Shown: positions 18,121 through 61,320, counted from the stretch's first letter. The stretch is 64,000 nucleotides of DNA from Octopus sinensis (GCF_006345805.1 NC_043001.1:20274001-20338000); one strand, 5' to 3'. Notes: a model not told the origin generated them from the letters alone. Numbers and translations: made by a program.

Positions 18121-19025
18121 CTAACACTCAATTGTACTTTGTACATTTCTGTCATTTCTTTCATTAATCCTCTCCAGGTAAACAGATATCTGATCTGTAC
18201 CAGTTTCTGAAACAGTATAGCTTACGCTGTCACTTCCGTTCGGTCTAGAGTTTGTAAATGTATTGTTTTTATATACTTCAAATGACATACCGTCAGAAAC
18301 TTTTGAATTCTTGTCAAAACTGAAGTTAGACAAAGTATCATTAATTTCAGATTTGGGAAACATGTCAGTGTACCAATTAGGAAACATCCTTTGTTTATAG
18401 TCTCGAGAAACTAAAGCATCATTTAAATTTTGTATTTCTCGACTTTCTTTCCAGTTCATTTGGAATTTTACATAGTATCTACTTGGTTGTATTGCAGACT
18501 GTTGGTCATTTATGTCACATAAGAGATTTTCAATTTGATTCAAGTCCAGACTATTATTATTTGCCAAAACATTTGGCCTGTATAAGTAATACATATTTTC
18601 TTGGGAATCTGAGCATAACTGAGAATTTTCAAAATTACTCAGATCTTCAAATGTTACATGAAAAATGTTCTTTGATTGATTTATATTATCTTTAGTGCAG
18701 AATTTAACAAGCTCAATTGTAAAATCAGCCATTTCTTGACCAATTCCATTTTTTTCCTCATTCTGGGAATGATAATACAGACCATCTGAATGAACAATAA
18801 TGAAGGTGTTGAAATAGTCATAAACATGTTGAATTTGTTTCTTAAGAAATTGGTTTCTTTTTAATTTTATTTCGTTGGAACTTCTTACATGTAAACTTGT
18901 ATAACTGTTTAGCATTATTGCTAGTTCTTTGACAGCAGCAGAGTGTTCCATGGGGTGAGGGAAACATATAACCAGTCCATATTGTTTTTGAGCATTCTTA
19001 CTGCCACATATATGTCGGAATAAAA
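18121..19025 (-). CDS. IL17R: IL-17 receptor-like gene, last coding exon (juxtamembrane + SEFIR domain + C-tail)
   Basis: The 276-aa ORF extends upstream in frame to a strong acceptor (tttttctttcag|tt). GLVICFPHPMEHSAAVKELAIMLNSY, FIIVHSDGLY and NIFHVTFE resemble SEFIR box motifs. Symbol is family-level only. Confidence 0.88.
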
Positions 19026-19500
19026 CTGAAAGAAAAAAAAAGAAGAGATATATTTTGATAAATGATAGGTTTTGATAAAATACAATATTTTGATAATTTC
19101 TTTTCCTGTTGCTGTTATTATCTCCATGATTGTCTTGTGTGTATGTATGAGCAGGAATGTATACTTATGTTGTGTGTGTGGTGGGGTGAATGTGTATATA
19201 TGTAAATGTATGCAAGTGGGTAATGAGAAGTTAACGAATAAAATATTGAAGTAAACAGCATAATGGGAACTCATCAGTTATGAGTTCAAATCTGGTGCAA
19301 GCTTTTCATTGTGTTTGGTCAGTAAAATTAATTCTGTATGCTTTAGTCTACAAAGTTCTTAATAATTTAAAACTGATTACCTTCCAATCACCTTATCTAA
19401 ATGTAACAACTTAAAACAGCAAACTCTAAGGCTAAGCTCCATATTTATGAAATTCTGTGGCTTGTTGACTCATTCTATATCATAGCAAAAAACCCTCGAC

Positions 19501-19729
19501 TTAACCCTTTAGTGTTTAAACCAACCATATCTGGCCAGAATATTTTCCTTGTTTTATGTTCAAACTTATGAGATTCAGCCTCTCACACCTACCCTACAAT
19601 GTCATTCTAAAGATAAATAATCACATCATCAAAATCTTGAAGCTATGAGACAATCACATGATTAATTCAAAACAATGTGAATAAATAAGCATTACATTTG
19701 ACTGAGTGATCTGAAAGCTACAGAGTTAA
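19501..19729. mobile_element. TTAA-specific MITE, family 1
   Basis: Similar along its length to 2007-2233; TTAA at both ends. Confidence 0.75.
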
Positions 19730-19989
19730 ACAGAATATTGTAGAAGTTTTCTGAATATAATTCAATGAAGAATTTGTGTAATGAATCTCACAACAGAAAT
19801 ACATTACAAAGAAACAATTCTAAAAGACCAACCTTCCAAAAAATAAATTCCAGCAGGAAATCCCGTCATAATTTAACAACAACAAATGGCACTCAGTCAG
19901 TTATGACGATGAGGGTTCCAGTTGATCCAATCAACAGAACAGCCTGCTCATTAAATTAAAATGAAAGTGGTTGAGCACTCCACAGACAC

Positions 19990-20264
19990 TCTTTTACACT
20001 TTTACTTGTTTCAGTCATTTGACTGCGGCCATGCTGGAGCACCGCCTTTAGTCGAGCAAATCGACCCCAGGACTTATTCTTTGTAAGCCTAGTACTTATT
20101 CTATCGATCTCTTTTGCCGAACTGCTAAGTTACGAGGACGTAAACACACCAGCATCAGTTGTGTCAAGCGATGTTGGGGGGGGACAAGCACAGTCACACA
20201 AACATAGACACACACACAGATACATACATACATACATACATACATACATACATACATACATACA

Positions 20265-20314
<50 letters not shown>

Positions 20315-20783
20315 CAATCAATATAAGGGTAACAAAAAATTCAAGAAAAATTTTCTGCCACCAGCGGTCAAGTGAGAAAATAGAAATAGTCACAGACTAT
20401 ATGATACATTCAAGAAAATATTAAGGAATGACCCTGAGAAGGTCGTTCGACTCACTTGAAAAGAGCAGCTAAAAACTCAAAACCGCAAAAAATATTAGTA
20501 ATTCTGAAACTAGAGGAAAATAAAAAACATTTATCCCCTTCAAACTTTGTACCCTGCAAGGTTTCAACATCTTCACAAGCCAAGCGTAAACGGATTTAAT
20601 TTAATTTAATTAAATTTGATTGCGTGAAGATGTTGAAACCTTGCAGGGTACAAAGTTTGAAGGGGATAAATGTTTTTTATTTTCCTCTAGTTTCAGAATT
20701 ACTAATATTTTTGCGGTTTGAGTTTTTAGCTGCTCTTTTCAAGTGAGTCGAACGACCTTCTCAGGGTCATTCCTTAATATTTT

Positions 20784-20824
<41 letters not shown>

Positions 20825-21018
20825 GTATATATATATATATATATACATATGTATGACAGGCTTCTTTCAGTTTCTGTCTACCAAATCCACTCACAAGCTT
20901 TGGTCAGCCTGAGGCTATAGCAGAAGACACTTGCCCAAGATGCCACGCAGTGGGACTGAATCCGGAACCATGTGGTTGGTAAGCAAGCTACTTACTACAC
21001 AGCCACTCCTACACCTAC
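19990..21018 (-). mobile_element. SINE type B split by the fold-back element
   Basis: Halves at 19990-20311 and 20786-21018. Confidence 0.8.
20312..20785. mobile_element. Second copy of the hammerhead-bearing repeat, with a fold-back inversion
   Basis: Arms 20415-20576 and 20624-20783 are near-perfect reverse complements; the element sits in the (TA)n of a SINE. Confidence 0.75.
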
Positions 21019-21397
21019 AGCAGGTTTCTTTCAGTTTTCATCAATCAAATCTACTAACAAGGCTTTAATTAGCATGAAACTATAGTAGAAGATACTTGCT
21101 CAAGGTGGCATGCAGTGAGAATGAACCTATGATTAAAGATATTCCAGCTATGACTGTCCATGATTTTTAAACAACAGGGAAGTGATTTGAAATAGATTTC
21201 ACAGCTTTTTTTCACTCGACTACGCATGCATATAAATGTTCCATCATTTGTTTTTTTACATCAATAAATTGTGAATTGTGGAGATATTTTATAACTGTCA
21301 GTTCCTTCATATGTGAAGCACTGTGAAGTAGAAATTTGATTGATATGAAGCAAATATATCTGAAGTATTTCAATCCAGCGTTTAAGTTCAGATAACA

Positions 21398-21800
21398 TCA
21401 TCATCGTTTAACGTCTGCTTTCCATGCTAGCATACGTTGGACGATTTGACCGAGGACTGGCAAACCAGATGGCTGCAATTGGCTCCAATCTTGATCTGGC
21501 GGGGTTTCTACACCTAGATGCCCTTCCTAATACCAACCACTCCAAGAGTGTAGTGGGTGCTTTTACGTGCCACCGGCACGAGGGCCAGTCAGGCGGTACT
21601 GGCAACGGCCACACTCAAATGGTGTTTTTTACGTGCCACCTGCACAAGAGCTAGTCCAGTGGCACTGGCAACGACCTTGCTTGAATGTTTTTTCACATGC
21701 CACCAGCACAAGTGTTAGTAAGGCAATGCAGGTAACGATCATGCTCAAATGGTGCTTTTTACGTGTCACTGGCACAGAAACCAGACAGCTGCTCTGGCAA
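21398..21800 (-). mobile_element. SINE type C
   Basis: Similar to other copies. Confidence 0.8.
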
Positions 21801-22619
21801 CTTGCTACTCAGGCAACGTTAGCTGGTCATATTTTATAATTATAATCCAAATAGAGAGCGGTGGGTGAGAGAGAGAGAGAGATCAAGGGAGCTTTGAGCC
21901 TCAAGCCATAGAGAGTCTCTACATGGTTGCTAGATCTGCTAGAAATAGGTCTCAAGTTTCCCTCAAATCACATCTTGTTATTTTGAAAAGGAACACTAGA
22001 TAAAACAGGGCTTAACACATAGACACACATGGCTGAATGGTTAAGGAGTTTATTTTATAATCACAAGATCCTGAGTTCAACCCCACCTCATGACAGCTTG
22101 GACATATCTTTTTGCTATAGCTTCATGTTAATTCTAGCCTTGTGAGTAGAATTAGGTCGATGGAGACTGTGGAATCCTATCAGATGGATTGTATCTGTAT
22201 TTCAAAGGTCTAACCTTGTCAGATACTGTCATATTTATTCATACTATCTGTCTACCTCTGTCTCTGTGTTTCAGTTTGTCTATCTTTCTGTCTGTTTTTG
22301 TCTCTGTCTGTTTCTGTTTGCATGTCTCTCTTTCTGTCTGTCTGTCTTTCTGCCTGCCTGTCTCTATCTGTTTCTGTTTGTCTTTCTGTCTGTCAGACTG
22401 TAAAGTATTAATATGTATGTATAATATATAATATATATCATAAAAATATGTTGGTGTTATTTAATTTCTGAACAGTTTTGCTGCTGTGTGTTTATGTAGT
22501 TTGATTTCTTTATCCATCAGTTTCTACTAAGATAGAGATGCAAGCAAAATTAATAATAGAGAAACAAAAATAAAACTTGGGAAACAGCCTAAAGGGAGAT
22601 AATTGAGAAAGACTTGAAA

Positions 22620-22850
22620 GTCAACATAAGATTGTAATCAGGTAATGCAAATAAAATAAATAATCCTGAATCCTTGTCCAGCACCAAATTGATCCCAAAA
22701 TCTAATCAGTTTGTGCCAGTCATGAGGCCAAGCATCCCTGAAAGTTTCATCTGAATCCATCCAGCAGTTCTTGAGATATCTTGTCCACAGACAAACAAAC
22801 ACGACTGAAAACAATATCTCTGCCTTAGCGAAGGCAGAGGTAATGATAAT
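22620..22850 (-). mobile_element. Helentron/DINE-like non-autonomous element
   Basis: ttattac-ctctgcc ttcgct aaggcagag hairpin followed by gtttgtttgtctgt. Confidence 0.5.
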
Positions 22851-22914
22851 GATGATGATGATGATAATGATAATAATAATAACAATAATAATAATAGTAC
22901 CAAGCAGTGGCACT

Positions 22915-23402
22915 TGTCATTTCTGATCTTAACTGATTGGAAGTGTTATCATGTACATTGTTTTGTCTTGGTATAAAGATGGGCTACAGCAAATATTCTG
23001 CTCAATACCACAGATTTGCTTGTCAGTTGTTTGACCTTAACCAGTTGATCATGTCTCTTAGTGTCTGACGATATGTGCATCTCTGATCATGAGCAGAAGT
23101 AGTGGGGGAGCATCATAACCATGTGTTGGGAAGGATTCTTTGGGGTTTGAATAATTCACCTGTGAAAACATGGGTGTTTCATTCAACATCCATAAATAAC
23201 CCTTATTCATGGACCTTTTGTGCAGGATGGGTTACTCGAGCAGAAGAAAATTCTAACTGGCCCCACCTGCAAGGTCATGCACATATGGTTGTGATGCATG
23301 TGCCTGGTGTACCCTTATCAGACGGGTAGTCATGATGGGTATACTGGGCTTCGTATATTTTATCCCAGTGTCACTTTGATGGCATGCACTGCTCTCTCAC
23401 TC

Positions 23403-23460
<58 letters not shown>
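22915..23460 (+). mobile_element. Retroelement-derived repeat embedded in (AAT)n
   Basis: Non-coding GC-richer block with an (AAT)n tail and an AAT/GAT tract upstream; family not assignable. Confidence 0.45.
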
Positions 23461-23461
<1 letters not shown>

Positions 23462-23996
23462 TAGTAGTAGTAGTAGTAATAATAATAAAAGTAATAATGG
23501 CTTCAAATTTTAGCCCAAGGTCAGCAATTTCAGGATCGGAGTAAGTTGATTACAATGATCTCTGTACTCAACTGGTACTTATTTGAATAACTCTGAAAGG
23601 ATGAAAGATAAAGAGGATCTTGGCAGGATTTGAACTCAGAATGCAAAGATGGACAAAACACCACTAAGCATCTTGCCTGGCATGATAAGAATTCATGAGA
23701 TAGCCACCCAAATGATAGTAATAATATTTCTTTCTGCTATAGGCTTAAAGCCTGAAACTTTGGTGCAGGGGGCCACTCGATTATATTAACTCCAGTATAT
23801 GACTGGTACTTATTTTATCAGTCCCGAAAGGATAAAACGGGTGAAGTCGACCTCAACAACATTTGAACCCAGAACATGAAGTTGGAAGAAATGCTACAAA
23901 GTATTTTCTGTGGTGCAGTAGTGATTCTGGTATCTCATCACCTCCAGGGACTACATAATAATAACATTAACAATAACTTCAATAGTAATAACTTAC

Positions 23997-24134
23997 CAAG
24001 CGATCCAATAAAAAGCATTAAAAAGAAGAGGACAATTATAGTTATTACAGTTGCAGTAAGGCCTTTGTTCTTGGAAACTTCGCTGGGTGTTGATCTTGAT
24101 GTTGTTGGTATTAATGTTGAACTGGAAATATTTT
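23997..24134 (-). CDS. IL17R-like exon: Ser/Thr stalk + transmembrane helix
   Basis: tttttcag|AA...TTG|gtaagt, 138 nt, phase 1-1. Encodes (E)NISSSTLIPTTSRSTPSEVSKNKGLTATVITIIVLFFLMLFIGSL and joins the SEFIR exon in frame. Confidence 0.85.
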
Positions 24135-24169
24135 CTGAAAAATCATTTCAAAAAGAAATAAGTTAATTG

Positions 24170-24830
24170 CTAAATTCCTTTAAATGTTTGTCCTCAAAAA
24201 TAGGAGTTTTTAATTATACGAAAATAGTATTTTTTATTACGTTTATATATTCATTTTGCAAGATTCTTGATGTGAAATCGTGTGTTGAAACAGATGTTGT
24301 TGTATTTAGGAATGGTCATTTTGCCAGTTTAGCCAATAAAAATAAAATGATTGACCATTAGTAAGGAGAGACACACAAATAAGAAAGAAGAAAGCAAAGG
24401 ACCACTGATGAGGTCACAAAAGTGTGACAAAAGAACTCTGGCCGAAATAAGATTATGATTAATGTAAGAAATAAATAACGCTGAAGCAAATTAACACCAA
24501 ATATATAGTGCGTGTGTTTTTATTGGCTAAACTGGCAAAATGATCATTCCTAAATACAACAACAGTATTTTTTATACTATCAAAATTGATTGTTTCAATA
24601 AATAATTATTTCTAATAATGGTACAAGTCCAGAAATTAGTGGAGAAGATTTAACCAATTATTCTATTTTGGGATGGTCATTTTATTTTTTGGCCAAATAA
24701 ATACACGCACTACATATGTATATATATATTTTTTTTTCCTTCACTCGTTTATTAGTGTCATTTTATTATTTTAAAGCCTGACCATTGTCCAGAAATCTTT
24801 TGTTACACATCTGTGACCTCTTCAATGACA
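24170..24830. mobile_element. Penelope-like terminal-repeat remnants in inverted arrangement
   Basis: 48-bp inverted repeat 24295-24342 / 24517-24564; CTGATGA..GAAA remnant at ~24405; a related inverted segment near 24740-24830. Confidence 0.5.
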
Positions 24831-25072
24831 TTTTGCGTTTCCATGTGTGTTCTTGGTCCACTTACTCCATTCTGTTCTTCTAAGATGTGAATCCTCATGT
24901 GCACATGTGTTTGTGTCCTTGTTTGTGTGTGTATATGTATGTGTATGCTTGTGTGTGAGTCATAGCTTTTAGCAGCAGTATGGCCTTCCCCTCAGCCCCA
25001 AACTCTCACCCCATTGTGCTGCTGCTGTCCTAAGACCCAAGAAAATTAAAAAGAGATTTACTAGGATTAGGG

Positions 25073-25410
25073 GCAGGCATGGCTTTGTGGTAAGTTGCTT
25101 GCTTACCACCTCATGGTTCTGGGCTCAGTCCCACTGTGTGGCACCTTGGGTAAGTGTCTTCTACAATATCATGGGGCCAACCAAAGCCTTGTGAGTGGAT
25201 TTGGTTGAGGGAAACTGAAAGAAGCCTGTCGTATGTGTGTGTCTGTGTGTTTGTCCTCCCCCCCCCACGCCATCGCTTGACAGCTGTTCTGGTGTGTTTA
25301 CGTCCTCGTAACTTAGCGGTTTGGTAAAAGAGACTGATATTTGTTTGACTAAAGGCGGTGCCCCAGCAGGGCCACAGTCAGATGACTGAAACAAATAGAA
25401 GAATAGAAGT
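25073..25410 (+). mobile_element. SINE type B
   Basis: Similar to other copies. Confidence 0.8.
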
Positions 25411-25861
25411 ATTACTTTAATCCTAGTACTTGACTGGTACTTTATCATATTGACTCCAGGGTAATGAAAGGCGAAGTTGATCCTTACAGAATTTGAACAC
25501 TGTATTTAAGCATCTAGAAAAAAAAATTCTGCAATGTATTGTATTTCACTCAACAATCTTACCAGTTGTGCCTGTTCATCTATCCTGATGATGATAATGA
25601 TGATGATGATGATGATGAACATGATGATAATGATAATGATAATGATGTCACGATAAAAGCACACACATACACAATGTCATGATAAAAACACACACACACA
25701 CTCACACACACTCAGGAGCATATCATTACCTCAGTTTATAGAAGACCTGAGTTTACACAGAAACCCTAGTGATAACAGCATAAATGAGGCAGAACCTTTA
25801 AGGGGAAGCCTCTTGCTCAGAAGTGGTTCTGTACAGATGCAGACTAACCTCAATCATTATT

Positions 25862-26262
25862 CTTATTTCTTTATTACCCACAAGGGGCTAAACATAGAGG
25901 GGACAAACAAGGACAGACAAACGACCCCAGTGCGTAACAGATACTTAATTTATCGACCCCGAAAGGATGAAAGGCAAAGTTGACCTCAACAGAATTTGAA
26001 TTCAGAATGTAACGGCAGACGAAATACCTATTTCTTTACTACCCACAAGGAGCTAAACACAGAGAGGACAAACAAGGACAGACAAACAGATTAAGTCAAT
26101 TATATCGACCCCAGTGCCTAGCTGGTACTTATTTAATTGACCCCGAAAGGATGAAAGGCAAGGTTGACCTCGGCAGAATTTGAACTCAGAACGTAGCAGC
26201 AGACGAAATACTGCTAAGCATTTCGCCCGGCGTGCTAACATTTTTTTGCCAGCTCGCCACCT
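25862..26262 (-). mobile_element. SINE type A dimer
   Basis: Same dimer junction. Confidence 0.85.
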
Positions 26263-26460
26263 TATTCATTATTCTAATAAAGTGATGAGGAGGAAATGGA
26301 TAAGTAAAGAGAACAGGATGGTGATGCAGTGCTACTTAGAAAGGGAACCGAAAGTAAGAGGTTACAGAAAATATATGTTAGCACTTTAGTTAAAGAAAGG
26401 TATGTTTGATGGAACAGATCAGAAACAAGCAGAGCAGACTAATGCTACTAGGAGAAATAA

Positions 26461-26683
26461 GGCGGCGAGCTGGCAGAAACGTTAGCATGTCAGGCAAAAT
26501 GCTCAGCAGTGTTTCGGCTGTCGCTACATTCTGAGTTCAAATTCTGCCATGGTCGACTTTGCCTTTCATCCTTTTGGGTTCGATTAAATAAGTACCAGTT
26601 ACGCACTAGGGTCGATATAATCGTCTTAATCTCTTTGTCCCTTCTGTGTTTAGCCCCTTGTGGGTAGTAAAGAAATAGGTATT
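26461..26683 (+). mobile_element. SINE type A inserted in the Dong element
   Basis: TSD ggagaaataag. Confidence 0.85.
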
Positions 26684-27139: not shown

Positions 27140-27496
27140 AGCCAGTGGAACGTAAAAAGCACCAACCATTCGTGGCTGTTGCCAGCCTCCCCTGGCACCT
27201 GTGCCGGTAGCACATAAAAAGCACCATCCATACGTGGTCGATGCCAGCGCCAATTTGACTGGCTTCCGTGCGAGTGGCACGTAAAAAGCACCAACCGATC
27301 GTGGCCGTTAATCAGCCTCCCCTGGCACATACAAACCACCCACTACACTCATGGAGTGGTTGGCGTTAGGAAGGGCATCCAGCTGTAGAAACACTGCCAG
27401 ACCAGACTGGAGCCTGGTGCAGCCTCCTGGCTTCCCAGACCCCGGTCGAACCGTCCAATCCATGCTAGCATGGAAAACGGACATTAAACAATGATG
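27140..27496 (+). mobile_element. SINE type C inside the Dong element
   Basis: Similar to other copies. Confidence 0.8.
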
Positions 27497-29237: not shown

Positions 29238-29291
29238 CTGGTTTTGCTCTTACACAAAAGTCTTCTGTCTTCTGTTGCACAACTGGATTAC
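29238..29291 (-). CDS. IL17R-like exon (membrane-proximal ectodomain)
   Basis: ttttttttaag|GT...CAG|gtaaat, 54 nt, phase 1-1; (C)NPVVQQKTEDFCVRAKP. Confidence 0.75.
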
Positions 29292-32318: not shown

Positions 32319-32379
32319 AGGGTATAAAAAGTGACGCTGATCGAATGATGTGGGTCTGGTGAACGCTTTCTGTCCTTAT
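32319..32379 (-). CDS. IL17R-like exon (end of second FN3-like domain)
   Basis: catttcag|ATA...CCT|gtaagt, 61 nt, phase 0-1; IRTESVHQTHIIRSASLFIP. Confidence 0.75.
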
Positions 32380-38205: not shown

Positions 38206-38283
38206 ATTTACATAATAATATTTGCCACATTGGAAACATTGAGATTTGAATTGCATGTGGATCATTTGTGTTTCTTGGTCAGT
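38206..38283 (-). CDS. IL17R-like exon (FN3-like)
   Basis: ttatttttcag|ACT...AAT|gtaaga, 78 nt, phase 0-0; TDQETQMIHMQFKSQCFQCGKYYYVN. Confidence 0.78.
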
Positions 38284-40130: not shown

Positions 40131-40267
40131 CAAATTTACAGAGTCACTGCATAATATTCTTAATAAAGGATGCCTTTGTTGTGTTATAAACACTGTGTAT
40201 AGTTTTGTTTCTTCGTTAAGATGTGTAAAATTAATATTTACATAGTTATCCACTTTGTTACATTGAA
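40131..40267 (-). CDS. IL17R-like exon (start of second FN3-like domain)
   Basis: atttttcag|TT...TTG|gtaagt, 137 nt, phase 1-0; (I)QCNKVDNYVNINFTHLNEETKLYTVFITQQRHPLLRILCSDSVNL. Confidence 0.8.
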
Positions 40268-40447
40268 CTGAAAAATTTCTGGGGGGAACTAAAAGAAAGA
40301 GAAAAAAAATAAATGAATGTTAAATATTTTTGAGTTGTACTTGTTTGTCAGGGTATTTACCTGAGATCACCTGTTGAAACAATCAATTAGATGTCTGTAG
40401 AAGCAAGATGTACACAAACCATTATATTGATCTTTGTAACATTGTTA

Positions 40448-42144: not shown

Positions 42145-42205
42145 TTTGAACAGCTGATGGAAAACGATAAATAGTTCCTGTAGTAAAGATTTTTCCCAAA
42201 AGTAT
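42145..42205 (-). CDS. IL17R-like exon (end of first FN3-like domain)
   Basis: ttttttatcattatag|ATA...AAA|gtaagt, 61 nt, phase 0-1; ILLGKIFTTGTIYRFPSAVQ. Confidence 0.72.
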
Positions 42206-45137: not shown

Positions 45138-45209
45138 CTTTACATCGTATTTTTGGGAAGGTTTCAGTTTTGATGAATTGACTCGAACCGTGGCTTTGTG
45201 ATTTGGTGA
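45138..45209 (-). CDS. IL17R-like exon (FN3-like)
   Basis: ttttgttttcacag|TCA...AAG|gtaata, 72 nt, phase 0-0; SPNHKATVRVNSSKLKPSQKYDVK (FN3 L-x-P-x-x-x-Y pattern). Confidence 0.78.
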
Positions 45210-47719: not shown

Positions 47720-48108
47720 CTAGCAGCATCGCCCAGCATTGCTCGGGTTTGTTTCGACCCTTTAGAATTGGAATTTTTGAAAAGTAAAAATTTTGCATCA
47801 TGTAGCTTGTTATTCTCTTTAAGTGAACATTTTTCTGGTTGAAATACACCAAAAAATGGCGACACACCAGTCAAAAATCGTAAAAAATAGGGATTTTCAT
47901 AGAAAAAAAAGCACCTTTTTGATGTAAATAATTTTTGGTGTTAACATGGTCTAATTTGAATTTTTTCTTCTACGGAAGGAAGAGCAAGCCTTCTTCTATC
48001 ATACTCTCAATTTTAGTCAACTTGCGCCGCAGGGTCTCGGAGAAGATAGTGTTAGTTGAAGGCTACCAAATCTGCCACACAGACAACTTCAGCTTTATAT
48101 ATACAGAG
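47720..48108 (-). mobile_element. Non-autonomous Helitron
   Basis: Minus strand: TC..tatatataaagctgaag 5' end, cccgagcaatgctggg hairpin, CTAG 3' end; similar to the 54865 copy. Confidence 0.7.
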
Positions 48109-49548
48109 ATTAGGATTTGTTCTCTTGGCCTGCTTATGTTTCCTCATGCACACAGCACAAGAATTGTTTGTAGTTGTATGTTCAGCTTGTTCCACATTGT
48201 GCAAACCAACGCCAACCAAACGATCCTCGGCAGTTGCTGGATAATCATGTCCCACATGGGTACTGACCCTCACAACACCGATTAGTTCACACAAAGCTTA
48301 TCCAAGAAAGCATGGAACGTGAAAGTTCTTTTGTTAGGCTGGAGGTGGGGCTTGTAAAATCCCTGCAAAACATAGGCATTATATAATGTCCACATAAAGA
48401 ACTTCATCACTAATCGGCAAGGCCATTTGTAATGGCGTTGGCACTTTTGGTCATTTTTTCTAGTCTTCCAATGAAGTTATTGTAATTCTTCACAGCTATG
48501 GAACAGAGGACAGGTACCTTTCTGTGTTCATTACAATCATACCTAGTGGCTGAGGTCATGGGTGAATCCACATAAATTGATGAAACGAAATATATGGGGC
48601 ATTTGTCTATCCATATTATCACTGTAATGTTCCAATCAGATCACTGATTCCCCTTTTTGTCTTCTGGGACACTTTGGAAAAGACCTTCTGCAAGCTCAAC
48701 TGATGTGTAAAGGAGGAGACCCATTCGGTCATAAATAACCATGGGATTGCACCTAGAAAGTTACCCTCTGAGGCACAATTCCAGGCAAGATTGTTTGTGG
48801 AAGGCTAGCATGCATACCAGCATCCCCTCTCCATGCCACTGATGTTATCCAAGGCAAAGGCCGATACAGATTGGCACCTGTGACGTCGCAACTCATTTCT
48901 ATCATTTGCACTACGAGAGTCCCTGTTACCCCCAAATTATCAACTGCTCAGGCATCTGGTCTCCTTCCAGAGTACACTTCAACATTCACAATGTAAACAT
49001 TTGCACTGTCTGTTGGCAGGAATGTCTTCAAGCACCAATGGATGGGTTTGTCTTTATGGATAAAGCGTTTTTGGTCAGAATCATACCTTCATCTGAAGAC
49101 ATCTCATATTCAGGCACAAAATGCTTTTGAAACCTTGGCAAGGTATAACCAATATCTGGCTGTGACTTATGTATTTTGTCTTTCTTATTTACATTAGGAT
49201 CATCCTCATCGACATAGTGTAACATTGACCATATAGCTAAAAACCTGTTCCTTACCATGACCTGCCCAAATCCTAGAGTTAATGTCAAAAAGCTGCCTTT
49301 TGTACGCCAGTACTGTTCATACCAATCCTTATGAGCTAACATCTCTGCAGCAACTCTACAAGCAAAGAAGGCTTTCATCTCTTTTACTATCATGTCATAC
49401 CATCTTTTTGCAGCATAGTTATTGGGCTTAGCAGCCTTGACACATGTGGCATTCTTATTACTTTCTCTAACCAAAATGTCCCAAAGCACATTATCCCCGA
49501 AAAGGGAGAGGAAAGCTAGGGTACCACTTTCTCCATTTATATTAGGTG

Positions 49549-49779
49549 CACTTTCCATGCTAGCATGTGTTGGACGATTTGACTGAGGTCTGGCGAACCA
49601 GATGGCTGCACCAGACTCCAATCTGATCTGGCAGAGTTTCTATAGCTGGATGGTGTTAGGAAGGGCATCCAGCTGTAGAAACTCTGCCAGATCAGATTGG
49701 AGTCTGGTGCAGCCATCTGGTTCACCAGACCTCAGTGAAATCGTCCAACCCATGCTAGCATGAAAAGTGGACGTTAAAC

Positions 49780-53193: not shown

Positions 53194-53270
<77 letters not shown>

Positions 53271-53279
53271 GTTTTCCCT

Positions 53280-54120
53280 ATTCTTCTATTCAGGAAACCT
53301 ACACATGTGTCCTAGCTATCACATATGTAGCAATTTGCCCTTCTGTGCTGTTCTGCCAAACTGGCCAACTTCGTAGAGTATGGCTCCAGGATAGACCAGT
53401 GGTCATTGAAAGTCATCAGGACCTAGAGATTCATACACCCACCTTTCCCTGCTGACCACATGTAATGAGTACAACAAGTCGACTCCACATTCACTATAAG
53501 TCAACACTGTTGCACGAAAGTTGCCACAGTCCAGGAGTCACCATTCATGCTAATATCTGGCCATGATCTTTGTGTTCTTGAGATCCATATACTACAGTAC
53601 CAGTCTGTGAGTTGGCATGTGGTTCACCAGGTTTATCTGAGCCCTCAATTAATTCTTGGTCTTAAAGACAAGATACGTGGTTCTATATCCCCAGCCCAAT
53701 TGATGGATCACATGTCTTGCCATTTCTGGACCAAAGTTTCTGCCAAATCTTCTTACAAGGGAATAATAGAAGCGCTGCTTTTTTATTTTCTAAATCAGAG
53801 GTCTACCACAGGTCTCTTTACGTTTCTTGAATAAATTTTGGGTGACAAGGAGTCCTGTCTTTTGTGATGCACCTTATCCATTCCTTCTTCTTCTCCTTGG
53901 GGTAGCTAAAGTCAGTGTGCTCCTTCTTCTCACACTCTTTGTCTAACATAATCTAATGATGTTGTTGTCACTAAATTTCATGTTTGTTTTTTAATTTTCC
54001 AGTCAAATTAATGTTTTCAACTCAGATTTTTCTTCTTTTTTCTCCAGTAAACAGTTTCACCTCAAAACCCTTTTAGCTTGAATTTTATCATTGTCAGTCT
54101 TTTGTTTGTTTTTCCATTTA
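53280..54120 (-). mobile_element. Heavily decayed DNA-transposon coding remnant (Tc1-like?)
   Basis: Broken frames with ETCGRP and LGWGYRTTY-like segments. Confidence 0.3.
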
Positions 54121-54504
54121 ACTTTTTTTTTAGAAAAAAAATGTTGGAGCTTGTTTACATTATGAACGATACTGTTACTAACACATGGCTATTTCTGAGG
54201 CCATTTTATGATGTGAATAACAATACCAACGACTTAAAGAAATTCTAAAAATAGGGAAAAATTTTAACAAGAAAATTAAATCAAAAGACTATATACTTGT
54301 AGTACTAATGGAATGCTTGTAATTAACTATGAAGATATAGTAATTTAGAGAGTAAAATCACTGCAAATGTTTTAAGTGGCAGGCCATGCTTTGGGGAGAA
54401 TGTTTAAAAATAGTAAAACTGTAGAATGATCGGATAGACTGGCAAAGAATTGATTTGTCAACATGTCACTACTTTGTCTTTGCAAACAATGTCCTCGCTC
54501 TTAC

Positions 54505-54561
54505 GATCAAATCAAAATGACAGCCTCTTAAAGTTGGTGAATTATAACAGTTATTTATTTC
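54505..54561 (-). CDS. IL17R-like exon (probable)
   Basis: cagacag|GAA...ATC|gtaaga, 57 nt, phase 0-0; EINNCYNSPTLRGCHFDLI. Weak pyrimidine tract. Confidence 0.55.
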
Positions 54562-54864
54562 CTGTCTGTGTAATATTTATTGAAAGGATAATTAATACAT
54601 TAGATAACATGTCAGAAATATTCAGTTTCATAGCCATGCATTTTTATGTCTTTCTACATCCTATTGCTAGGATTTTCAAATAATGGCTGTTGTCAAATAC
54701 TGACAGGATCAAAGAAATCCATCAAACACATGAGTTTTGAACAAACTCTTCTATGGCATTGCAGTGTTTTTCTAGTTTCCATGTATTTTTACTGCTTTCT
54801 GTCTTTGGATTGTGATCATATTGAAGCAATGCCTTTTGGATGTTTTAGTTAATCATATATTATA

Positions 54865-55204
54865 CTAGCAGTATCGCCCGGCGTTGCTCGGGTTTGTTTC
54901 GACCCTTTAGGATTGGAATTTTCGAAAAGTAAAAATTTTGCATTATGTAGCTTGTTATTCTCTTTAAGTGAACTGTAAAAAATATAGATTTTCATAGAAA
55001 AAAAGCACCTTTTTGATGTAAATAATTTTTGGTGTTAACATGGTCCGATTTGAATTTTATCTTCTACGGAATGAAGAGCAAGCCTTCTTCTATCATACTC
55101 TCAATTTGGTCAACTTGCACCGCAGGGTCTGGGAGGAGATAGTGTTAGTTGAAGGCTACCAAACCTGTCATACACAGACAACTTCAGCTTTATATATAGA
55201 AAGA
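54865..55204 (-). mobile_element. Non-autonomous Helitron
   Basis: cccgagcaacgccggg hairpin + gatactgCTAG end. Confidence 0.75.
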
Positions 55205-55329
55205 TTAACTCCAGTTCTTTGAACTGGTACTTAATTCATCAATAGGATGGGTTCTTCATCATAGAAAGATGTAACTCACTCATAATAATTCTACAAGGAT
55301 TTGTTTTTGCATTTTTTTGCATTGATTTA

Positions 55330-55480
55330 TTTGAAATATCTTGCCAATACATACATCACATCACATCTATTTTTAACAATCTATGATGCACTGTTTTCAG
55401 CCAATGTCTCCCAGTTATCCACATCTGTTTCCAAAGCTTCTATAGTATTTTCTGTGGCTTTTCCCCTCTGGTCAGCTCCC
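55330..55480 (-). mobile_element. RTE-like LINE C-terminal remnant
   Basis: IEALETDVDNWETLAENSA resembles the RTE C-terminal W-E-x-L-A motif. Confidence 0.5.
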
Positions 55481-55660
55481 CATAAAATAGATATATACAT
55501 ATATATGACGAGCTTCTTTCAGTTTCCATCTGCCAAATCCACTCACAAGGTTTTGGTTTAAGTTCATCTTATTTGATATAAAAGACATGATTAATAAAAA
55601 TGGGTATTGATTTTTACATTAAAGAAAATGTTTTAACTACAAAAATATTTAAATTCTTAC

Positions 55661-55785
55661 CACAGAAACGTTTGCAAAGGAAATAGAATTAGTCAAAGAA
55701 ACTTGGATATATGCCACTCCTTCAGGTATTTGACTAACTATGATTGCCACATTAGAGTTCTGGTAGAGAGTCTTCAGCAACAATC
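55661..55785 (-). CDS. IL17R-like exon (start of first FN3-like domain)
   Basis: aaatttttag|GA...GTG|gtaaga, 125 nt, phase 1-0; (G)LLLKTLYQNSNVAIIVSQIPEGVAYIQVSLTNSISFANVSV. Confidence 0.78.
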
Positions 55786-56796
55786 CTAAAAATTTAAGCA
55801 TAATTTATTAGAATACTTTTGCAAGATTCTTGCTGTGAATTCTTGTGTTTTGGGAGGGTCATTAAGTCAATAATGATAAATACAATTCTTTGCTGTTAGT
55901 CAACAGGTTAATATCTAACTAAAGCTCTAACTAATTGTTTGTTTAATGTGGTGGCTAAACTATCAATTGATTGTTTATTTGTCAAAGTCTTTTCACCCAT
56001 TCCATTCTCTTGTAAGCAATCATACATCTACATACGTACAGACAAGCATAAGACTAATTCTCAGACAGACCTCAAAGCAGTCTTTGAAAAGAGAGAGAGC
56101 ATGTCATTGATGTATTTGTGAATAGGACTTTGACAAGGAAACAACATTAAATAAATGATCAGTTAGTTAGTTGGTTAGATATTTAACCAGTTGCATGGCT
56201 GCATTCCAATGAGTGAAGCAAGTAAAAGATAAAAGATATATAAGGTATACTGGTTTCAAATTTTGACACAAGGTCAGTGAATTTAGGTGATGGGGTAGGT
56301 CATTTACACTGACCCCAGTGTTCAACTGGTACTTATCTTATTGACCCAGATGAAAGGCAAAGCTGATCTCAATAGAATTTGAACTCAGAACATAAAGATG
56401 AATGAAATGCCACTAAGCATAAAGAAGTGATATTGAACCAGTGCATGTGTTCATTATTATTGGAGTAATGACCATTCCAAACCACCACAAAATTTGAGAT
56501 GCATTTCATTTATTTATCAGTAAATTAGGTTATGTAACCTAATTCTAAGGTTTGAATTCTAAGTTGATTAATTGATATTACTTCATACCTGTATTTATTA
56601 TATATGTATGTTTTATTGTGTGTGATTAAGAAACTTGCTTCAGAATCATGAAATGCTAGGTTCAGTCTCACTGCACGTCACCACAGTCTTCTATGATAAC
56701 CTTTCGTCTACTCAAGACTACTTGAGGGGAACTGAGTGAACAAAAACAACGTAGAAGTCTATTGAATGAATTGTACTTATAACAAAGGACCAGCCT

Positions 56797-56839
<43 letters not shown>

Positions 56840-56848
56840 TACATGCAT

Positions 56849-56911
<63 letters not shown>

Positions 56912-57021
56912 CATGCACACTCAGACACACACTACATGCCTACACATGCACACAAAATGTCTACGTAAGGATTACATGGTTAAAAGGATGAGTGTCTGTG
57001 GAATACACAGCCATTTACTTT

Positions 57022-58020
57022 CATCATCATCATAATTTAACGTCTGCTTTCCATGCTAGCATGGGTTGGACGATTTGACTGAGGTCTGGCGAACCAGACT
57101 CCAATCTGATTTGGCAGAGTTTCAACAGCTGGATGCCCTTCCTAATGCCAACCACTCTGAGAGTGTAGTGGATGCTTTTACGTGCCACCGGCATGAGGGC
57201 CAGTTTGGTGGTACTGGCATCAATAAATAGTTTCTTTGAACAAATCCTTGGAATACTCAACATTGAAGCTGATACTAGATCTATTCAACATATATATGTA
57301 ATTTTGGGGCCTGAGATACTTTATATGTGGACCTCTCTATATATCTGCACACATGGGCTAAAACTGGTTCCTATTTCCACAAAGGTAGTAATTGTTAGGG
57401 CTATTTATTTGAAATAGAAAGTCATTCGGTCAGTCAGGTACATAACCTAATTAAATTCATCACCATCATCATCATCGTTTAATGTCCGCTTTCCATGGTA
57501 GCATGGGTTGGACAATGTGACTGAGGGCTGGCAAACCAGATGGCTGCACCAGGCTTCAATCTTGATCTGGCATAGTTTCTACAGCTGGATGCCCTTCCTA
57601 GCACCAACCACTCCGAGAGTGTGGTGGGTGCTTTTACGTGCCACCCGCATGGAGTCAGTCAGGCGGCACTGGCAATGACATTGCTCGAATCTTTTTACAC
57701 ATGCCACCAGCACGGGTGCCAGTAAAGCGATGCTGGTAACGATCACACTCGAATGGTATCCTTTTTTACGTGCCACCGGCACGGAAGCCGGTTAGCCACT
57801 CTGGCAATGATCATGCTTGGATAGTGCTCTTAATACCCTACTAGCACAGGGCTTGAGTGCCAGTAATGCGACGCTGGTAACGATCACGCTCGAATGGTGC
57901 CTTTTAAGTGCTACTGGCACAGAAACCGGTTGGCCGTTCTGTCAATGATCATACCTGTATGGTGCTCTTTGCACCCCACTAGCATGGACGCCAGTCATCG
58001 AATTTAATTTTGATTTTTGA
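57022..58020 (-). mobile_element. Two SINE type C copies (about 57022-57200 and 57462-58020)
   Basis: Similar to other copies. Confidence 0.8.
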
Positions 58021-58255
58021 TTTTGATTTAAATTAGGTTAAATAAATGAAATGCATCTCAAATTTCGAGTATCCAAATATGATGATATTTCAATTTCATA
58101 ATGTGACATACTTCAACATTAAAATATTTCAATAAAATAATTTTAGAATTAAGTAAAGTCAATTGTCAAATCAAAGTGGCTGCTCCCTGTTATTACAACT
58201 CGTTTAACCCCAGGCAGATCTTCCACCAGCTGGTCATTGGTGCAACACTGCATGC

Positions 58256-58666
58256 TTTTACTCTTTTATTTGTTTCAGTCATTTGACTGTGGCCATGCTG
58301 GAGCACCGCCTTTAGTCGAGCAAATCGACCCCAGGACTTGTCCTTTGTAAGCCTAGTACTTATTCTATTGGTCTCTTTTGCCGAACCACTAAGTTATGGG
58401 GACGTAAACACACCAGCATCGATTGTCAAGCGATGTTGGAGGGACAAACACAGACACACAAGCACATACACACACACACACATATATATATACACATATA
58501 CGGCGGGCTTCTTTCAGTTTCTGTCTACCAAATCCACTCACAAGGCTTTGGTCAGCCCGATGCTATAGTAGAAGACATTTGCCCAAGGTGCCATGCAGTG
58601 GGAATGAACCTGGAACCATGTGGCTGGTAAGCAAGCTACTTACCACACAGCCACGCCTACGCCTAT
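58256..58666 (-). mobile_element. SINE type B
   Basis: Full copy. Confidence 0.85.
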
Positions 58667-58781
58667 GTATATACAATATATAGATTGCTAGCTGGGGGTG
58701 TTCCATGTTACTACTAGTTTAACCCCAAGCAGATCTTCCACCAGCTGGTTATTGGTGCGACACTGCATGCTTTATATACAA

Positions 58782-59176
58782 CTAGCAGTATCGTCCGACG
58801 TTGCTCGGGTTTGTAAGGGAAATAACTATATAAGCATTTTTAGAGATGTAAAGTATAATAGCCATCTCAATATGGCTAACCACAAGGGGGGGTGTTACTG
58901 TAGCTTTTTGCATTCTGAGATTTAATAATAAATTTTTAGAGAGTTACTTCCCTTATATATGCCAAAAATGCATTAAAAATGGGAAAAATTGATGGTAAAT
59001 TTTTTTTTAAATCATAGACTCATCGAAGACGCACGCTAATACCCAGAAGGGCTCGATATGAATCACGACTATAAGATACCCGGTTTTGGTTAAACTGCAC
59101 CGCAAAATGTGGGAGTAGTTAGGAATCTAAATCGTAGGAGACAGACAGCACACAACCTTACTTTTATATATAGAGA
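58782..59176 (-). mobile_element. Non-autonomous Helitron with a different internal sequence
   Basis: Same CTAG/hairpin end and TC-tatatataaaag start. Confidence 0.7.
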
Positions 59177-59553
59177 TGTGTAGATTGCTAGCAGGGGGAG
59201 CAAACTCCTACCATCCTCTAGCAGACAACAGGATCACGAGACTGACTCAGTTTCAAGCTGGCTGGCTCATCCTCAACCATGAGCACCTGGTCACCACAGT
59301 GAGAGTTAGGATCTGCTCCAGCCAGCAATGTATTGTAAACAAAGTGACCGATTTGCAAAATCAGTCACTGATTTGCAAAAAGCAAAATAGCTAGTTGCAA
59401 AATCTTTAAGAAGGGATCAGAATAGTAATTATACAAACAAGTAAAGTCAATTGCCACATTAAAGTAGCTGCTCCGTGTTACTGCATGTTTAACCCCAGGT
59501 CAGTCTTCTGGCCACTGGTTATCAGTGTGATGCTGCAACTTTTATATACAATA

Positions 59554-60160
59554 TACAGGGTGTCCACAAAGTCTGGGTACATGGGGATTAACACATGTTT
59601 ATGTTATGATTTTATTTACTCCATGTACCCACATGGGCATTAACACATACTTTAAGAAATTATTATTTCTTATATTCAATTGTTTATGTTATGATTTTAT
59701 TTACTCCATGTACCCACATGAGCATTAACACATACTTTAAGAAATTACTATTTCTTATATTTAATTCTTTGTTATGATTTTATTTACTCCATGTACCCAC
59801 ATGGGGATTAACACATACTTTAAGAAATTATTATTTCTTATATTCAATTGTTTATGTTATGATTTTATTTACTCCATGTACCCACATGAGCATTAACACA
59901 TACTTTAAGAAATTATTATTTCTTATATTCAATTGTTTATGTTATGATTTTATTTACTCCATGTACCCACATGGGCATTAACACATACTTTAAGAAATTA
60001 TTATTTGTTATATTCAATTGTTTATGTTATGATTTTATTTACTCCATGTACCCACATGGAGATTGACACATACTTTAAGAAATTACTATTTCTTATATTT
60101 AATTCTTTATTTTTATGATTTTATTTACTCCATGTACCCAGACTTTGTGGACACCCTGTA
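59554..60160. mobile_element. Tc1/mariner-type MITE with an internal ~85-bp tandem array
   Basis: TA + perfect 29-bp TIR cagggtgtccacaaagtctgggtacatgg; about six internal units. Confidence 0.85.
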
Positions 60161-60355
60161 TATTGCTAGCAGGGGGAGCGAACTCCTACCATCCTCTAGC
60201 AAACAATAGGATTGCAAGACTGACTCAGTTTAAAGCTGGTTGGCTTAACCTCAGTCGCGAGCACCGGAGCGATAACCAAGGTCTGCTCCAGTCAGCAATA
60301 TATTGTCCTGTTGTCTGCTAGAGGATGGTAGGGGTTCACACATCCTGCTAGCAAT
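60161..60355. mobile_element. MITE with ~50-bp imperfect TIRs (tattgctagcagg...)
   Basis: Inverted termini visible; partial copy at 59176-59340. Confidence 0.7.
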
Positions 60356-60564
60356 ATATATTGTATACTAGCAGTATAGCCCAGCTTTGCTCGGGATTAA
60401 GTTAGGATTATTAAGCTAATCAAGCTCTTTATTTCAAAGCAAACTAAGTAACATCGACATCAAATTTGAGTGAAATCCGTTGAAATTGGTAAACTTTTGG
60501 CTGAAATTTTGCAGACAATTTGATTGGGAAATCCCATAAGGAATCGGTTTATTGATTTTTTTCC

Positions 60565-60835
60565 ACTCATTGTGCCAGCCTCGGCTGGCCTCCGTGCCGG
60601 TGGCACGTAAAAAAACACCATCCGAGCGTGGTCGTTCGCCAGCCTCATCTGGCACCTGTGTCGGTGGCACATAAAAAGCACCCACTACACTCATGGAGTG
60701 GTTGGCATTAGGAAGGACATCCAGCTATAGAAACACCACCAGATCTGACTGGCCTGGTGCAGCCTTCGGGCTTCCCAGACTCCAGTTGAACCGTCCGACC
60801 CATGCTAGCATGGAAAGCAGGCGTTAAACGATGAT
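60565..60835 (+). mobile_element. SINE type C
   Basis: Similar to other copies. Confidence 0.8.
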
Positions 60836-61286
60836 TGATTGTTTTTTTTTTCGTTTTTGGAGAACTTAAAGCAGTCAAAGATCCCATGAGTCCTAAGTAA
60901 TGCTGGCATCAAGTTTGAACAAAATACATCAAAATTGGTAGACGTTATGGTTGAAAAGAGTCAGATCTCTCCTTTCGAAAACATGGACAGTTTCAAAACA
61001 TTGTTTACAAAATGCAAATTTGTAAACACCCAGACATAAGTTCTGTAAGTGGAATAGAGAGATAAGCCTTCTCCTACAGAGATGTGAGAGTTAGATAATG
61101 GGTGCAGTAACACACGTAACCAGCTGGCAGAAGATCTGTCAGGGGTTAAACTAGTAGTAACATGGAACAGCCACTTTGATGTGGCGATCGACTTTACTTG
61201 TTAGTATAGTTACTACTCTGATCTCTTGTTGAGATTTTACAATTTTAGAATTATTTAATTTCAACTTCACAATTTTCAGTACTTAC

Positions 61287-61320
61287 CTGTATGACCTGTC
61301 TTTTCTTTCTTGGAAAAGCT
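61287..61320 (-). CDS. IL17R-like exon (short)
   Basis: ttctttttggaatag|AGC...CAG|gtaagt, 34 nt, phase 0-1; SFSKKEKTGHT. Confidence 0.6.

What the first reader, a model, noticed from the sequence alone, without database searches (positions are those of the whole stretch)
18121..61320. Complete-looking IL-17 receptor-like gene spread over more than 43 kb of repeats
Seen: 11 GT-AG exons join in phase with no stop (573 aa). Five N-glycosylation sequons (NVS, NSS, NFT, NLT, NIS) all lie before a single hydrophobic helix (TATVITIIVLFFLMLFIGSLVLF), followed by a SEFIR-like domain. Only the last exon appears correctly in the ORF track. Known: SEFIR defines IL-17 receptors and Act1, and IL-17-like ligands are expanded in octopus. 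Inference: this is a divergent receptor for that ligand family.
Basis: partly seen in the sequence, partly recalled or inferred. Interest (0 to 1): 0.7.

Follow-up and report, generated by a model that had tools for sequence, protein, structure and literature searches.

The report
Orphan octopus membrane receptor, SEFIR-like fold unproven
The split gene is real and is already in RefSeq as an uncharacterised Octopus sinensis gene for a single-pass membrane glycoprotein, but no sequence test shows the claimed IL-17-receptor (SEFIR) domain, and only a medium-confidence predicted structure hints at it.

Summary
The minus-strand gene exists. The window is 100% identical to Octopus sinensis chromosome CM016863.1.

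In the window there are 10 GT-AG exons (1686 nt, 561 aa plus stop), not 11 exons and 573 aa. Exon 1 (start codon and signal peptide) lies 22.4 kb beyond the window, so the gene is not complete here.

The transmembrane helix is exactly as quoted. The in-window ectodomain has six sequons, not five.

The IL-17 receptor reading has no sequence support:
- Pfam gives no SEFIR or TIR hit.
- Searches of PDB sequences find nothing.
- Profile-profile comparison with SEFIR alignments gives P of 0.25-0.75.
- Smith-Waterman z is at most 1.8, against 4-31 for true human-mussel SEFIR pairs.
- A SEFIR HMM run with filters off scores about 0 bits.
- The ectodomain gives only a weak generic fn3 match.

An exhaustive search of 1.84 billion proteins found just two other lineages with this cytoplasmic domain.

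An untemplated AlphaFold model of the domain (pLDDT 57) has IL-17RA SEFIR (4NUX) as its best PDB match (E 0.014, TM about 0.48), followed by IL-17R/ACT1 and many TIR domains.

Verdict: an orphan receptor with a possibly SEFIR/TIR-like signalling domain. The ligand is unknown.

The parts
61287..61320 (-). Exon 2 of LOC115212051 isoform X1 (34 nt, SFSKKEKTGHT). It is the first exon inside the window and is skipped in isoform X2.
   Evidence: Exact match to XP_029636720.1 residues 32-43, with an AG acceptor and a GTAAGT donor
55661..55785 (-). Exon 3 (125 nt, ...LLLKTLYQNSNVAIIVSQIPEGVAYIQVSLTNSISFANVSV). It carries the NVS sequon and is skipped in X2. Exons 2 and 3 together are 159 nt, so the skip is in frame.
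45138..45209 (-). Exon 4 (72 nt, SPNHKATVRVNSSKLKPSQKYDVK), with the NSS sequon
42145..42205 (-). Exon 5 (61 nt, ILLGKIFTTGTIYRFPSAVQ)
40131..40288 (-). Exon 6 (158 nt, PPRNFSVQCNKVDNYVNINFTHLNEETKLYTVFITQQRHPLLRILCSDSVNL). It starts the weak fn3-like region and has the NFS and NFT sequons. The NLT sequon spans the next junction.
   Evidence: Pfam fn3 E 0.025 over residues 130-214
38206..38283 (-). Exon 7 (78 nt, TDQETQMIHMQFKSQCFQCGKYYYVN), with the CxxCG motif that is shared with the P0003 homologue
32319..32379 (-). Exon 8 (61 nt, IRTESVHQTHIIRSASLFIPC)
29238..29291 (-). Exon 9 (54 nt, NPVVQQKTEDFCVRAKP)
23997..24134 (-). Exon 10 (138 nt). It holds the NIS sequon, a Ser/Thr-rich stalk and most of the transmembrane helix. 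Helix residues 271-294 are encoded at 24060-23997 and continue at 19025-19018.
   Evidence: the only Kyte-Doolittle window above 1.6
18121..19025 (-). Exon 11, the last (905 nt including the TAG stop). It encodes the whole cytoplasmic region.
18370..18978 (-). Conserved cytoplasmic alpha/beta domain (residues 308-510, GLVICFP...FPNWY). It is the only part conserved in the two other lineages (27-28% identity) and is the candidate SEFIR/TIR-like fold.
   Evidence: phmmer E 1e-14 and 9e-14; alignments; AlphaFold and Foldseek

Best explanation
This is the in-window part (exons 2-11) of a real protein-coding gene, Octopus sinensis LOC115212051. It encodes a single-pass type I membrane glycoprotein with these parts:
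- a signal peptide (exon 1, outside the window);
- an ectodomain of about 250 aa with seven sequons, six cysteines and one weak fn3-like module;
- a Ser/Thr-rich stalk;
- one transmembrane helix;
- a cytoplasmic alpha/beta domain of about 200 aa, followed by a low-complexity tail.

The family is narrow and evolves fast. Only two other lineages carry the cytoplasmic domain, and their ectodomains are no longer alignable.

The cytoplasmic domain most likely adopts a STIR-type (SEFIR/TIR-like) flavodoxin-like fold with a C-terminal helical extension, as in IL-17RA. It is so diverged that no sequence method recognises it.

If so, the protein would work as a signalling receptor. Ligand-driven clustering of the ectodomain would let the cytoplasmic domain recruit a SEFIR or TIR adaptor (an Act1/CIKS-like protein) by homotypic contact, leading to TRAF6 and NF-kB signalling.

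Shown: the gene model, the membrane topology, the conservation pattern and the predicted fold match. Inferred: the SEFIR ancestry, the adaptor recruitment and any IL-17-like ligand.
For: Gene and species:
- The window is 100% identical to the RefSeq chromosome, and the product is identical to XP_029636720.1 and XP_036359090.1.
- Every junction has a canonical splice site.
- Homologous spliced mRNA contigs from six sequencing runs of another species encode the same ecto-TM-cytoplasmic layout. In a related genome the TM exon and the last exon are 6.5 kb apart.

Topology:
- There is one hydrophobic helix, with basic residues after it, and the weak fn3 match lies before it.

Fold:
- The AlphaFold model was built from family sequences only (pLDDT 56.7, pTM 0.56) and has strand-helix alternation.
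- In the Foldseek search of 350,542 PDB chains, rank 1 is 4nux, IL-17RA SEFIR (E 1.4e-2, prob 0.97, TM 0.47/0.49, 212 columns).
- Ranks 2 and 4 are IL-17RA/RB/ACT1 chains. About 13 more of the top 40 are TIR domains: SPARTA, B. cereus TIR, MyD88, RPPT-TIR, IL-18Rbeta and ThsB.
- In the poorer first model, IL-17RB SEFIR (3vbc) had the highest probability among non-significant hits.
- The non-significant hhalign alignment is collinear over 165 columns and pairs the predicted strands with SEFIR strands A to D.
Against: - Pfam gives no SEFIR or TIR hit at E<=10 for any of the three family members.
- Sequence and profile searches of the PDB find nothing relevant.
- hhalign gives P 0.25-0.75.
- Smith-Waterman z is at most 1.8, against 4-31 for genuine SEFIR pairs across human and mussel.
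- A 30-sequence SEFIR HMM with filters off scores -0.7 to 0.7 bits, no better than shuffles.
- The tryptophan that starts helix alphaB in IL-17RA, IL-17RB and the mussel receptors is absent (read from the alignments; the role of Trp428 is from PMC4014126).
- The AlphaFold alignment holds only 4 sequences (3 lineages), the model confidence is modest, no Foldseek hit reaches E 0.001, TM is below 0.5 and rmsd is 7.5 A.
- The ectodomain has no significant similarity to mussel IL-17R ectodomains.
Confidence: 0.45

Rival explanations
1. It is an orphan, lineage-restricted membrane glycoprotein whose cytoplasmic alpha/beta domain is a new family unrelated to SEFIR or TIR. It might act in adhesion or scaffolding, or as an enzyme using the invariant Cys-Pro...His and YYHS residues. 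On this view the Foldseek match reflects a generic parallel alpha/beta sandwich produced from a shallow alignment.
For: Every sequence-level test for SEFIR or TIR is null. Only three clusters were found in 1.84 billion proteins. Model confidence is low to medium and Foldseek E is 0.014 or worse. Flavodoxin-like and Rossmann-like enzymes also appear among the hits.
Against: The top four Foldseek hits include three SEFIR-containing chains, and TIR domains are far more frequent among the top 40 than their share of the PDB would predict. The match to 4nux covers the whole domain, including the C-terminal helix (212 columns).
Confidence: 0.35
2. The cytoplasmic domain is TIR-like rather than SEFIR-like, so the protein is a diverged Toll/IL-1R-type receptor that would signal through MyD88-like adaptors or NAD+ cleavage.
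For: Many TIR domains appear among the Foldseek hits with probabilities of 0.4-0.84, and some also appear.
Against: SEFIR chains rank first and align over about 210 columns, against about 130-200 for TIRs. Pfam gives no TIR or TIR_2 hit. No box 1, box 2 or catalytic Glu pattern is evident in the alignment (my reading).
Confidence: 0.1
3. It is a canonical IL-17 receptor orthologue (IL-17RA to RE or IL-17RD-like) that binds one of the expanded octopus IL-17-like cytokines.
For: The type I layout with the whole cytoplasmic region in one last exon fits. A CxxC motif lies near the end of the ectodomain, as in all six mussel IL-17R isoforms (supplement of PMC8353272; comparison by eye). The fold match also fits.
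Against: Canonical SEFIRs are easy to detect. Mussel receptors score 1e-11 to 1e-29 with Pfam SEFIR (PMC8353272) and z 4-31 against human ones. This protein scores nothing. No IL17R_fnIII_D1, IL17R_fnIII_D2 or IL17_R_N hit was found, and the ectodomain tests are null.
Confidence: 0.04
4. The gene is a mis-predicted model or a decaying pseudogene stitched from chance open segments.
For: No transcript of the O. sinensis gene itself could be retrieved. The exons are short and the introns long and repeat-rich.
Against: Ten exons are open and in frame with good splice sites, and all lie in unique sequence. The 300-codon last exon is intact. Homologues are transcribed and spliced in another species and conserve about 50 invariant positions.
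Confidence: 0.04

Closest known systems
RefSeq LOC115212051, Octopus sinensis (XP_029636720.1 isoform X1, 592 aa; XP_036359090.1 isoform X2, 539 aa), 'uncharacterized protein'
   Same: It is the same gene. The window DNA is 100% identical to CM016863.1, and the product is identical over residues 32-592.
   Different: RefSeq assigns no function or domain. The window lacks exon 1.
Human IL-17RA SEFIR domain with its C-terminal helical extension (PDB 4NUX; PMC4014126)
   Same: It is the best structural match of the predicted cytoplasmic domain (Foldseek rank 1, 212 columns, TM about 0.48). Both sit in a type I receptor just after the membrane helix, and in both a long C-terminal helix follows the alpha/beta core.
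   Different: There is no detectable sequence similarity. The alphaB tryptophan is missing. The IL-17RA ectodomain has two IL-17R-specific fnIII domains that are not detected here.
Mussel (Mytilus galloprovincialis) IL-17R isoforms A-F (PMC8353272)
   Same: These are molluscan type I receptors with a Ser/Thr-rich stalk, a CxxC motif before the stalk, and multi-exon genes of 10-38 kb.
   Different: The mussel receptors have Pfam-significant SEFIR domains (E 1e-11 to 1e-29) and align with human SEFIRs at z 4-31. The octopus protein aligns with neither, in the cytoplasmic domain or the ectodomain.
TIR domains (MyD88, IL-18Rbeta, bacterial SPARTA, ThsB and B. cereus TIR)
   Same: They are second-tier Foldseek matches with the same flavodoxin-like STIR topology.
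   Different: Their alignments are mostly shorter and rank below SEFIR. Pfam gives no TIR hit.

Membership tests
IL-17 receptor family | Cytoplasmic SEFIR domain recognisable by sequence (Pfam PF08357 or similarity to known SEFIRs) | tested here: not met
   No hit at E<=10 in three family members. The PDB searches miss 4NUX and 3VBC. hhalign gives P 0.25-0.75. Smith-Waterman z is at most 1.8. A SEFIR HMM with filters off scores about 0 bits.
IL-17 receptor family | SEFIR three-dimensional fold (five-stranded parallel sheet with helices alphaA, alphaB', alphaB, alphaC and alphaE) | tested here: inconclusive
The AlphaFold model has pLDDT 56.7. The Foldseek top hit is 4nux at E 0.014, prob 0.97, TM 0.47/0.49 and rmsd 7.5 A, and no hit reaches E 0.001.
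IL-17 receptor family | Type I topology: signal peptide, extracellular N-terminus, single transmembrane helix | tested here: met
   There is one hydrophobic helix at residues 271-294, followed by R/H/K residues, and seven sequons lie upstream. The N-terminus MNLVLGLMISVLFVDHSGS is in exon 1, outside the window. No signal-peptide predictor was run.
IL-17 receptor family | IL-17R-type extracellular fnIII domains (Pfam IL17R_fnIII_D1, IL17R_fnIII_D2, IL17_R_N) | tested here: not met
   Only a generic fn3 match was found, at E 0.025 and 15.2 bits against a cut-off of 25. There is no significant similarity to mussel IL-17R ectodomains.
IL-17 receptor family | Binds an IL-17 cystine-knot cytokine and recruits Act1/CIKS | not testable with these tools
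   This needs binding and signalling assays.
TIR-domain receptors (Toll/IL-1R) | TIR domain by sequence (Pfam TIR or TIR_2) | tested here: not met
   No hit at E<=10.
TIR-domain receptors (Toll/IL-1R) | TIR fold | tested here: inconclusive
   Several TIR structures appear among the Foldseek hits at E 0.03-0.2, ranked below SEFIR.
Cephalopod-restricted orphan family (LOC115212051, P0002, P0003) | Conserved 200-aa cytoplasmic domain with invariant GLV.C.P....H, I..S...YYHS, MA.F.I.L.K and NWK.S.E..NL..AL..R | tested here: met
   phmmer E 1e-14 and 9e-14 in an exhaustive search, with only three clusters found.

The most novel reading that the evidence does not exclude
LOC115212051 and its two homologues are a cryptic, cephalopod-specific clade of SEFIR-fold receptors. 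They have diverged beyond sequence recognition and evolved alongside the expanded octopus IL-17-like cytokine repertoire, so cephalopods would have more IL-17-type receptors than domain searches count.
Probability: 0.15. Interest if true: 0.6.

Novelty: new variant of a known kind. Interest (0 to 1): 0.35.

Why it matters
Octopus carries more than 30 IL-17-like genes (Albertin 2015, as cited in PMC8353272). Receptors are usually counted by Pfam SEFIR hits. If a receptor family with a SEFIR-type fold escapes all sequence profiles, receptor repertoires in cephalopods, and perhaps other invertebrates, are undercounted. It would also give orphan ligands a candidate partner.

If the fold match is spurious, this is just one more lineage-restricted uncharacterised membrane protein that RefSeq already holds.

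The case also shows that a reading of raw sequence can recover a RefSeq-grade exon chain, while its domain call fails formal tests.

Tried and rejected
- **Word-indexed protein search with the last exon:** no hits. With the family profile it found only P0002. With an IL-17RA/RB profile it gave 36 vertebrate fragments of low diversity.
- **My own splice-site and ORF scans:** at strict thresholds they recovered only two true exons. They were replaced by mapping the RefSeq protein. A first greedy mapping script was faulty.
- **Other libraries:** PADLOC gave only a weak CARF match (E 3.4e-4, 17.7 bits) in the octopus sequence and none in its homologue, which I judge compositional. NCBIfam gave nothing.
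- **Motif resemblances seen by eye:** FIIVHSDG against KIIVLCSRG, Y.L, and PNWY against PDWF or PNWI, with about the same 200-aa spacing. I do not count these as evidence, because every statistical test of the same alignment is null.
- it printed stale numbers after a failed command and should be ignored. One search is the valid run.
- **CxxC-region HMM from the mussel receptors:** 1.8 and 0.9 bits, no better than shuffles.
- **Paralogues in the window:** none found by tblastn.
- **O. sinensis transcripts, looked up by exact protein:** none on record.
- **Rfam and tRNA scans of the window:** nothing.
- **Literature:** no paper mentions the locus.


Full report
**What is there**

A pyrimidine-rich AG acceptor precedes 19025, and an open frame runs to a TAG ending at 18121. 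The quoted helix is encoded at 24057-23997. It is completed across the last intron by a split Val codon (G + TT) followed by Leu-Phe.

An exhaustive HMMER search of 1.84 billion representative proteins with these two exons returned one protein 100% identical over all 346 residues. The cluster look-up names it XP_036359090.1, 'uncharacterized protein LOC115212051 isoform X2 [Octopus sinensis]'. Its cluster mate is XP_029636720.1, isoform X1, 592 aa.

The NCBI locus (GCA_006345805.1, CM016863.1, 20,282,121-20,370,449) is identical to the window over the whole 55,880-base overlap.

**Gene model**

Mapping isoform X1 onto the minus strand gives ten exons: 61320-61287, 55785-55661, 45209-45138, 42205-42145, 40288-40131, 38283-38206, 32379-32319, 29291-29238, 24134-23997 and 19025-18121. 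They total 1686 nt, or 561 codons plus the stop. Every intron is GT-AG.

Isoform X2 skips the first two of these exons (159 nt, in frame).

Exon 1 (93 nt, MNLVLGLMISVLFVDHSGSTSLNSLQDENNL, donor GTGAGT) is absent from the window. It lies 22,449 bp beyond the window's upper end, and the whole gene spans 68.3 kb.

The counts (11 exons, 573 aa) are slightly off, and 'complete-looking' is wrong.

The in-window introns are 1.8-10.5 kb. About 45% of the span is self-similar repeat, yet none of the exons overlaps a repeat.

**Protein features**

- There is one strongly hydrophobic segment, residues 271-294, followed by R-H...K...K.
- Upstream of it are seven sequons: NLS in exon 1, then NVS, NSS, NFS, NFT, NLT and NIS.
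- The ectodomain also has six cysteines, and a Ser/Thr-rich stalk lies just before the helix.
- Pfam gives only a sub-threshold fn3 match at residues 130-214 (E 0.025, 15.2 bits against a cut-off of 25).
- N-x-S/T motifs also occur in the cytoplasmic tail, so 'all lie before the helix' is not literally true. This does not matter biologically.

**Relatives**

Only two other clusters in the whole library match, and only in the cytoplasmic domain (E 1e-14 and 9e-14, 27-28% identity).

- P0002 is an ORF on a 234-kb ENA contig.
- P0003 is a 550-aa ORF on roughly 2-kb Logan contigs from six sequencing runs.

The Logan contigs carry ectodomain, helix and cytoplasmic domain in one ORF. In the related ENA genome the helix exon and the last exon are 6.5 kb apart. 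The Logan contigs are therefore spliced mRNAs, and the homologue is expressed with the same layout.

The ENA contig shares no repeats with the octopus window, so it comes from a distant species, which I could not identify.

About 50 positions are invariant across the three lineages. The ectodomains are no longer significantly alignable, even within the family.

**Is the cytoplasmic domain a SEFIR? Sequence tests**

- Pfam at E<=10 gives no SEFIR or TIR hit for the last exon, the full protein or either homologue.
- phmmer and a family-profile hmmsearch against all PDB sequences do not find the SEFIR structures. The human IL-17RA SEFIR sequence does retrieve 4NUX, 9OT1 and 3VBC in the same tool.
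- hhalign of the family profile against IL-17RA/RB, a 28-sequence vertebrate profile and a 30-sequence profile that adds two mussel receptors gives P-values of 0.25-0.75.
- Smith-Waterman scores against human IL-17RA and IL-17RB and mussel IL17R-A and IL17R-C give z of at most 1.8. The true SEFIR pairs give z from 3.9 to 31.
- A SEFIR HMM run with all filters off scores 0.7, -0.3 and -0.7 bits, which 141-310 of 500 shuffles equal or beat (one search is void).

Mussel IL-17 receptors, by contrast, score 1e-11 to 1e-29 with Pfam SEFIR (PMC8353272).

**Structure tests**

It was poor (pLDDT 40.7), and its Foldseek matches were noise.

The second model used P0003 as target, with 4 sequences and no templates. 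It reached pLDDT 56.7 and pTM 0.56, with alternating strands and helices and a long C-terminal helix.

The second model's Foldseek results against 350,542 PDB chains were:
- Rank 1 is 4nux, the IL-17RA SEFIR domain (E 1.4e-2, prob 0.97, TM 0.47/0.49, 212 aligned columns).
- Ranks 2 and 4 are chains of the IL-17RA/RB/ACT1 assembly.
- About 13 more of the top 40 are TIR domains.

No hit reaches E 0.001, and rmsd is 7.5 A.

The hypothesised family came out first from an unbiased search, with its sister fold heavily enriched behind it, and I take that as real but moderate evidence for a STIR-type fold. A shallow alignment can still make AlphaFold emit a generic alpha/beta sandwich.

The non-significant hhalign alignment is collinear over 165 columns and pairs the predicted strands with SEFIR strands A to D. 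This is consistent but not independent evidence.

The alphaB tryptophan stressed in the IL-17RA structure paper (PMC4014126) is not conserved here.

**Is the ectodomain like an IL-17 receptor?**

No IL-17R-specific Pfam domain matches. Smith-Waterman and HMM tests against the mussel ectodomains taken from the paper's supplement are null. A CxxC(G) motif just before the stalk is shared by eye with all six mussel isoforms, but it is too short to carry weight.

**Conclusion**

The best reading is a lineage-restricted type I receptor-like glycoprotein whose cytoplasmic domain may be an extremely diverged SEFIR/TIR-type module (about 0.45). It would signal by homotypic recruitment of an adaptor.

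The main rival is an unrelated novel alpha/beta domain (about 0.35). A canonical IL-17 receptor is unlikely. Nothing here speaks to the ligand.

Noticed in passing
window 10797 downwards, minus strand (exon 1 about 10797-10687): A second annotated gene starts 7.3 kb downstream of the stop codon, on the same strand. Its first exon reads MTYILLLMVTIYFISSKPLIVCTLYTNQKSVKNLNCP followed by GTAAGT, which looks like a signal peptide. The record gives a 620-aa product with no Pfam hit, and the gene runs off the window. It could be another orphan membrane protein or a distant paralogue, but tblastn with the LOC115212051 family finds nothing there.
   Followed up: partly
window 49031-49639, minus strand (further open pieces at 48055-48640 gave no Pfam hit): A PiggyBac-type transposase fragment (Pfam DDE_Tnp_1_7, E 1.5e-17) lies inside the 10.5-kb intron between exons 3 and 4, in the same orientation as the gene.
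   Followed up: partly
13 copies on both strands, e.g. window 1148, 13540, 27391, 30639, 35430, 49681, 50723, 63329: A short interspersed repeat has a conserved pseudo-translation (...[37 protein letters not shown]...). With (TG)n, (TA)n and His/Thr-coding microsatellites it makes up much of the 46% of the window that is self-similar. No tRNA or Rfam match was found.
   Followed up: partly
L002-L007 (Logan mRNA contigs of the P0003 homologue), first 430 nt: The homologue's ORF starts at an internal-looking Met (MSCNTKKKGS...) with no signal peptide and an in-frame stop just upstream. Further upstream in that frame, before two more stops, is a hydrophobic stretch (ISLYMFCLVLVASL). This suggests a retained intron or an alternative 5' end in those transcripts.
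   Followed up: no
cytoplasmic domain, residues 354-466 of X1 (window about 18840-18502): There is a weak PADLOC 'CARF' match (E 3.4e-4, 17.7 bits) in the octopus sequence only, not in P0003. It is probably compositional.
   Followed up: no
window 62482-62886, minus strand: A 135-codon open segment (…HKIINHLTNNNSEHLLKLHPSNTRGHVYKVRKQHSS…FFMLRVAEAWNKLP…) resembles the C-terminal tail of a non-LTR retrotransposon ORF, going by my own knowledge. Pfam gave no hit.
   Followed up: partly
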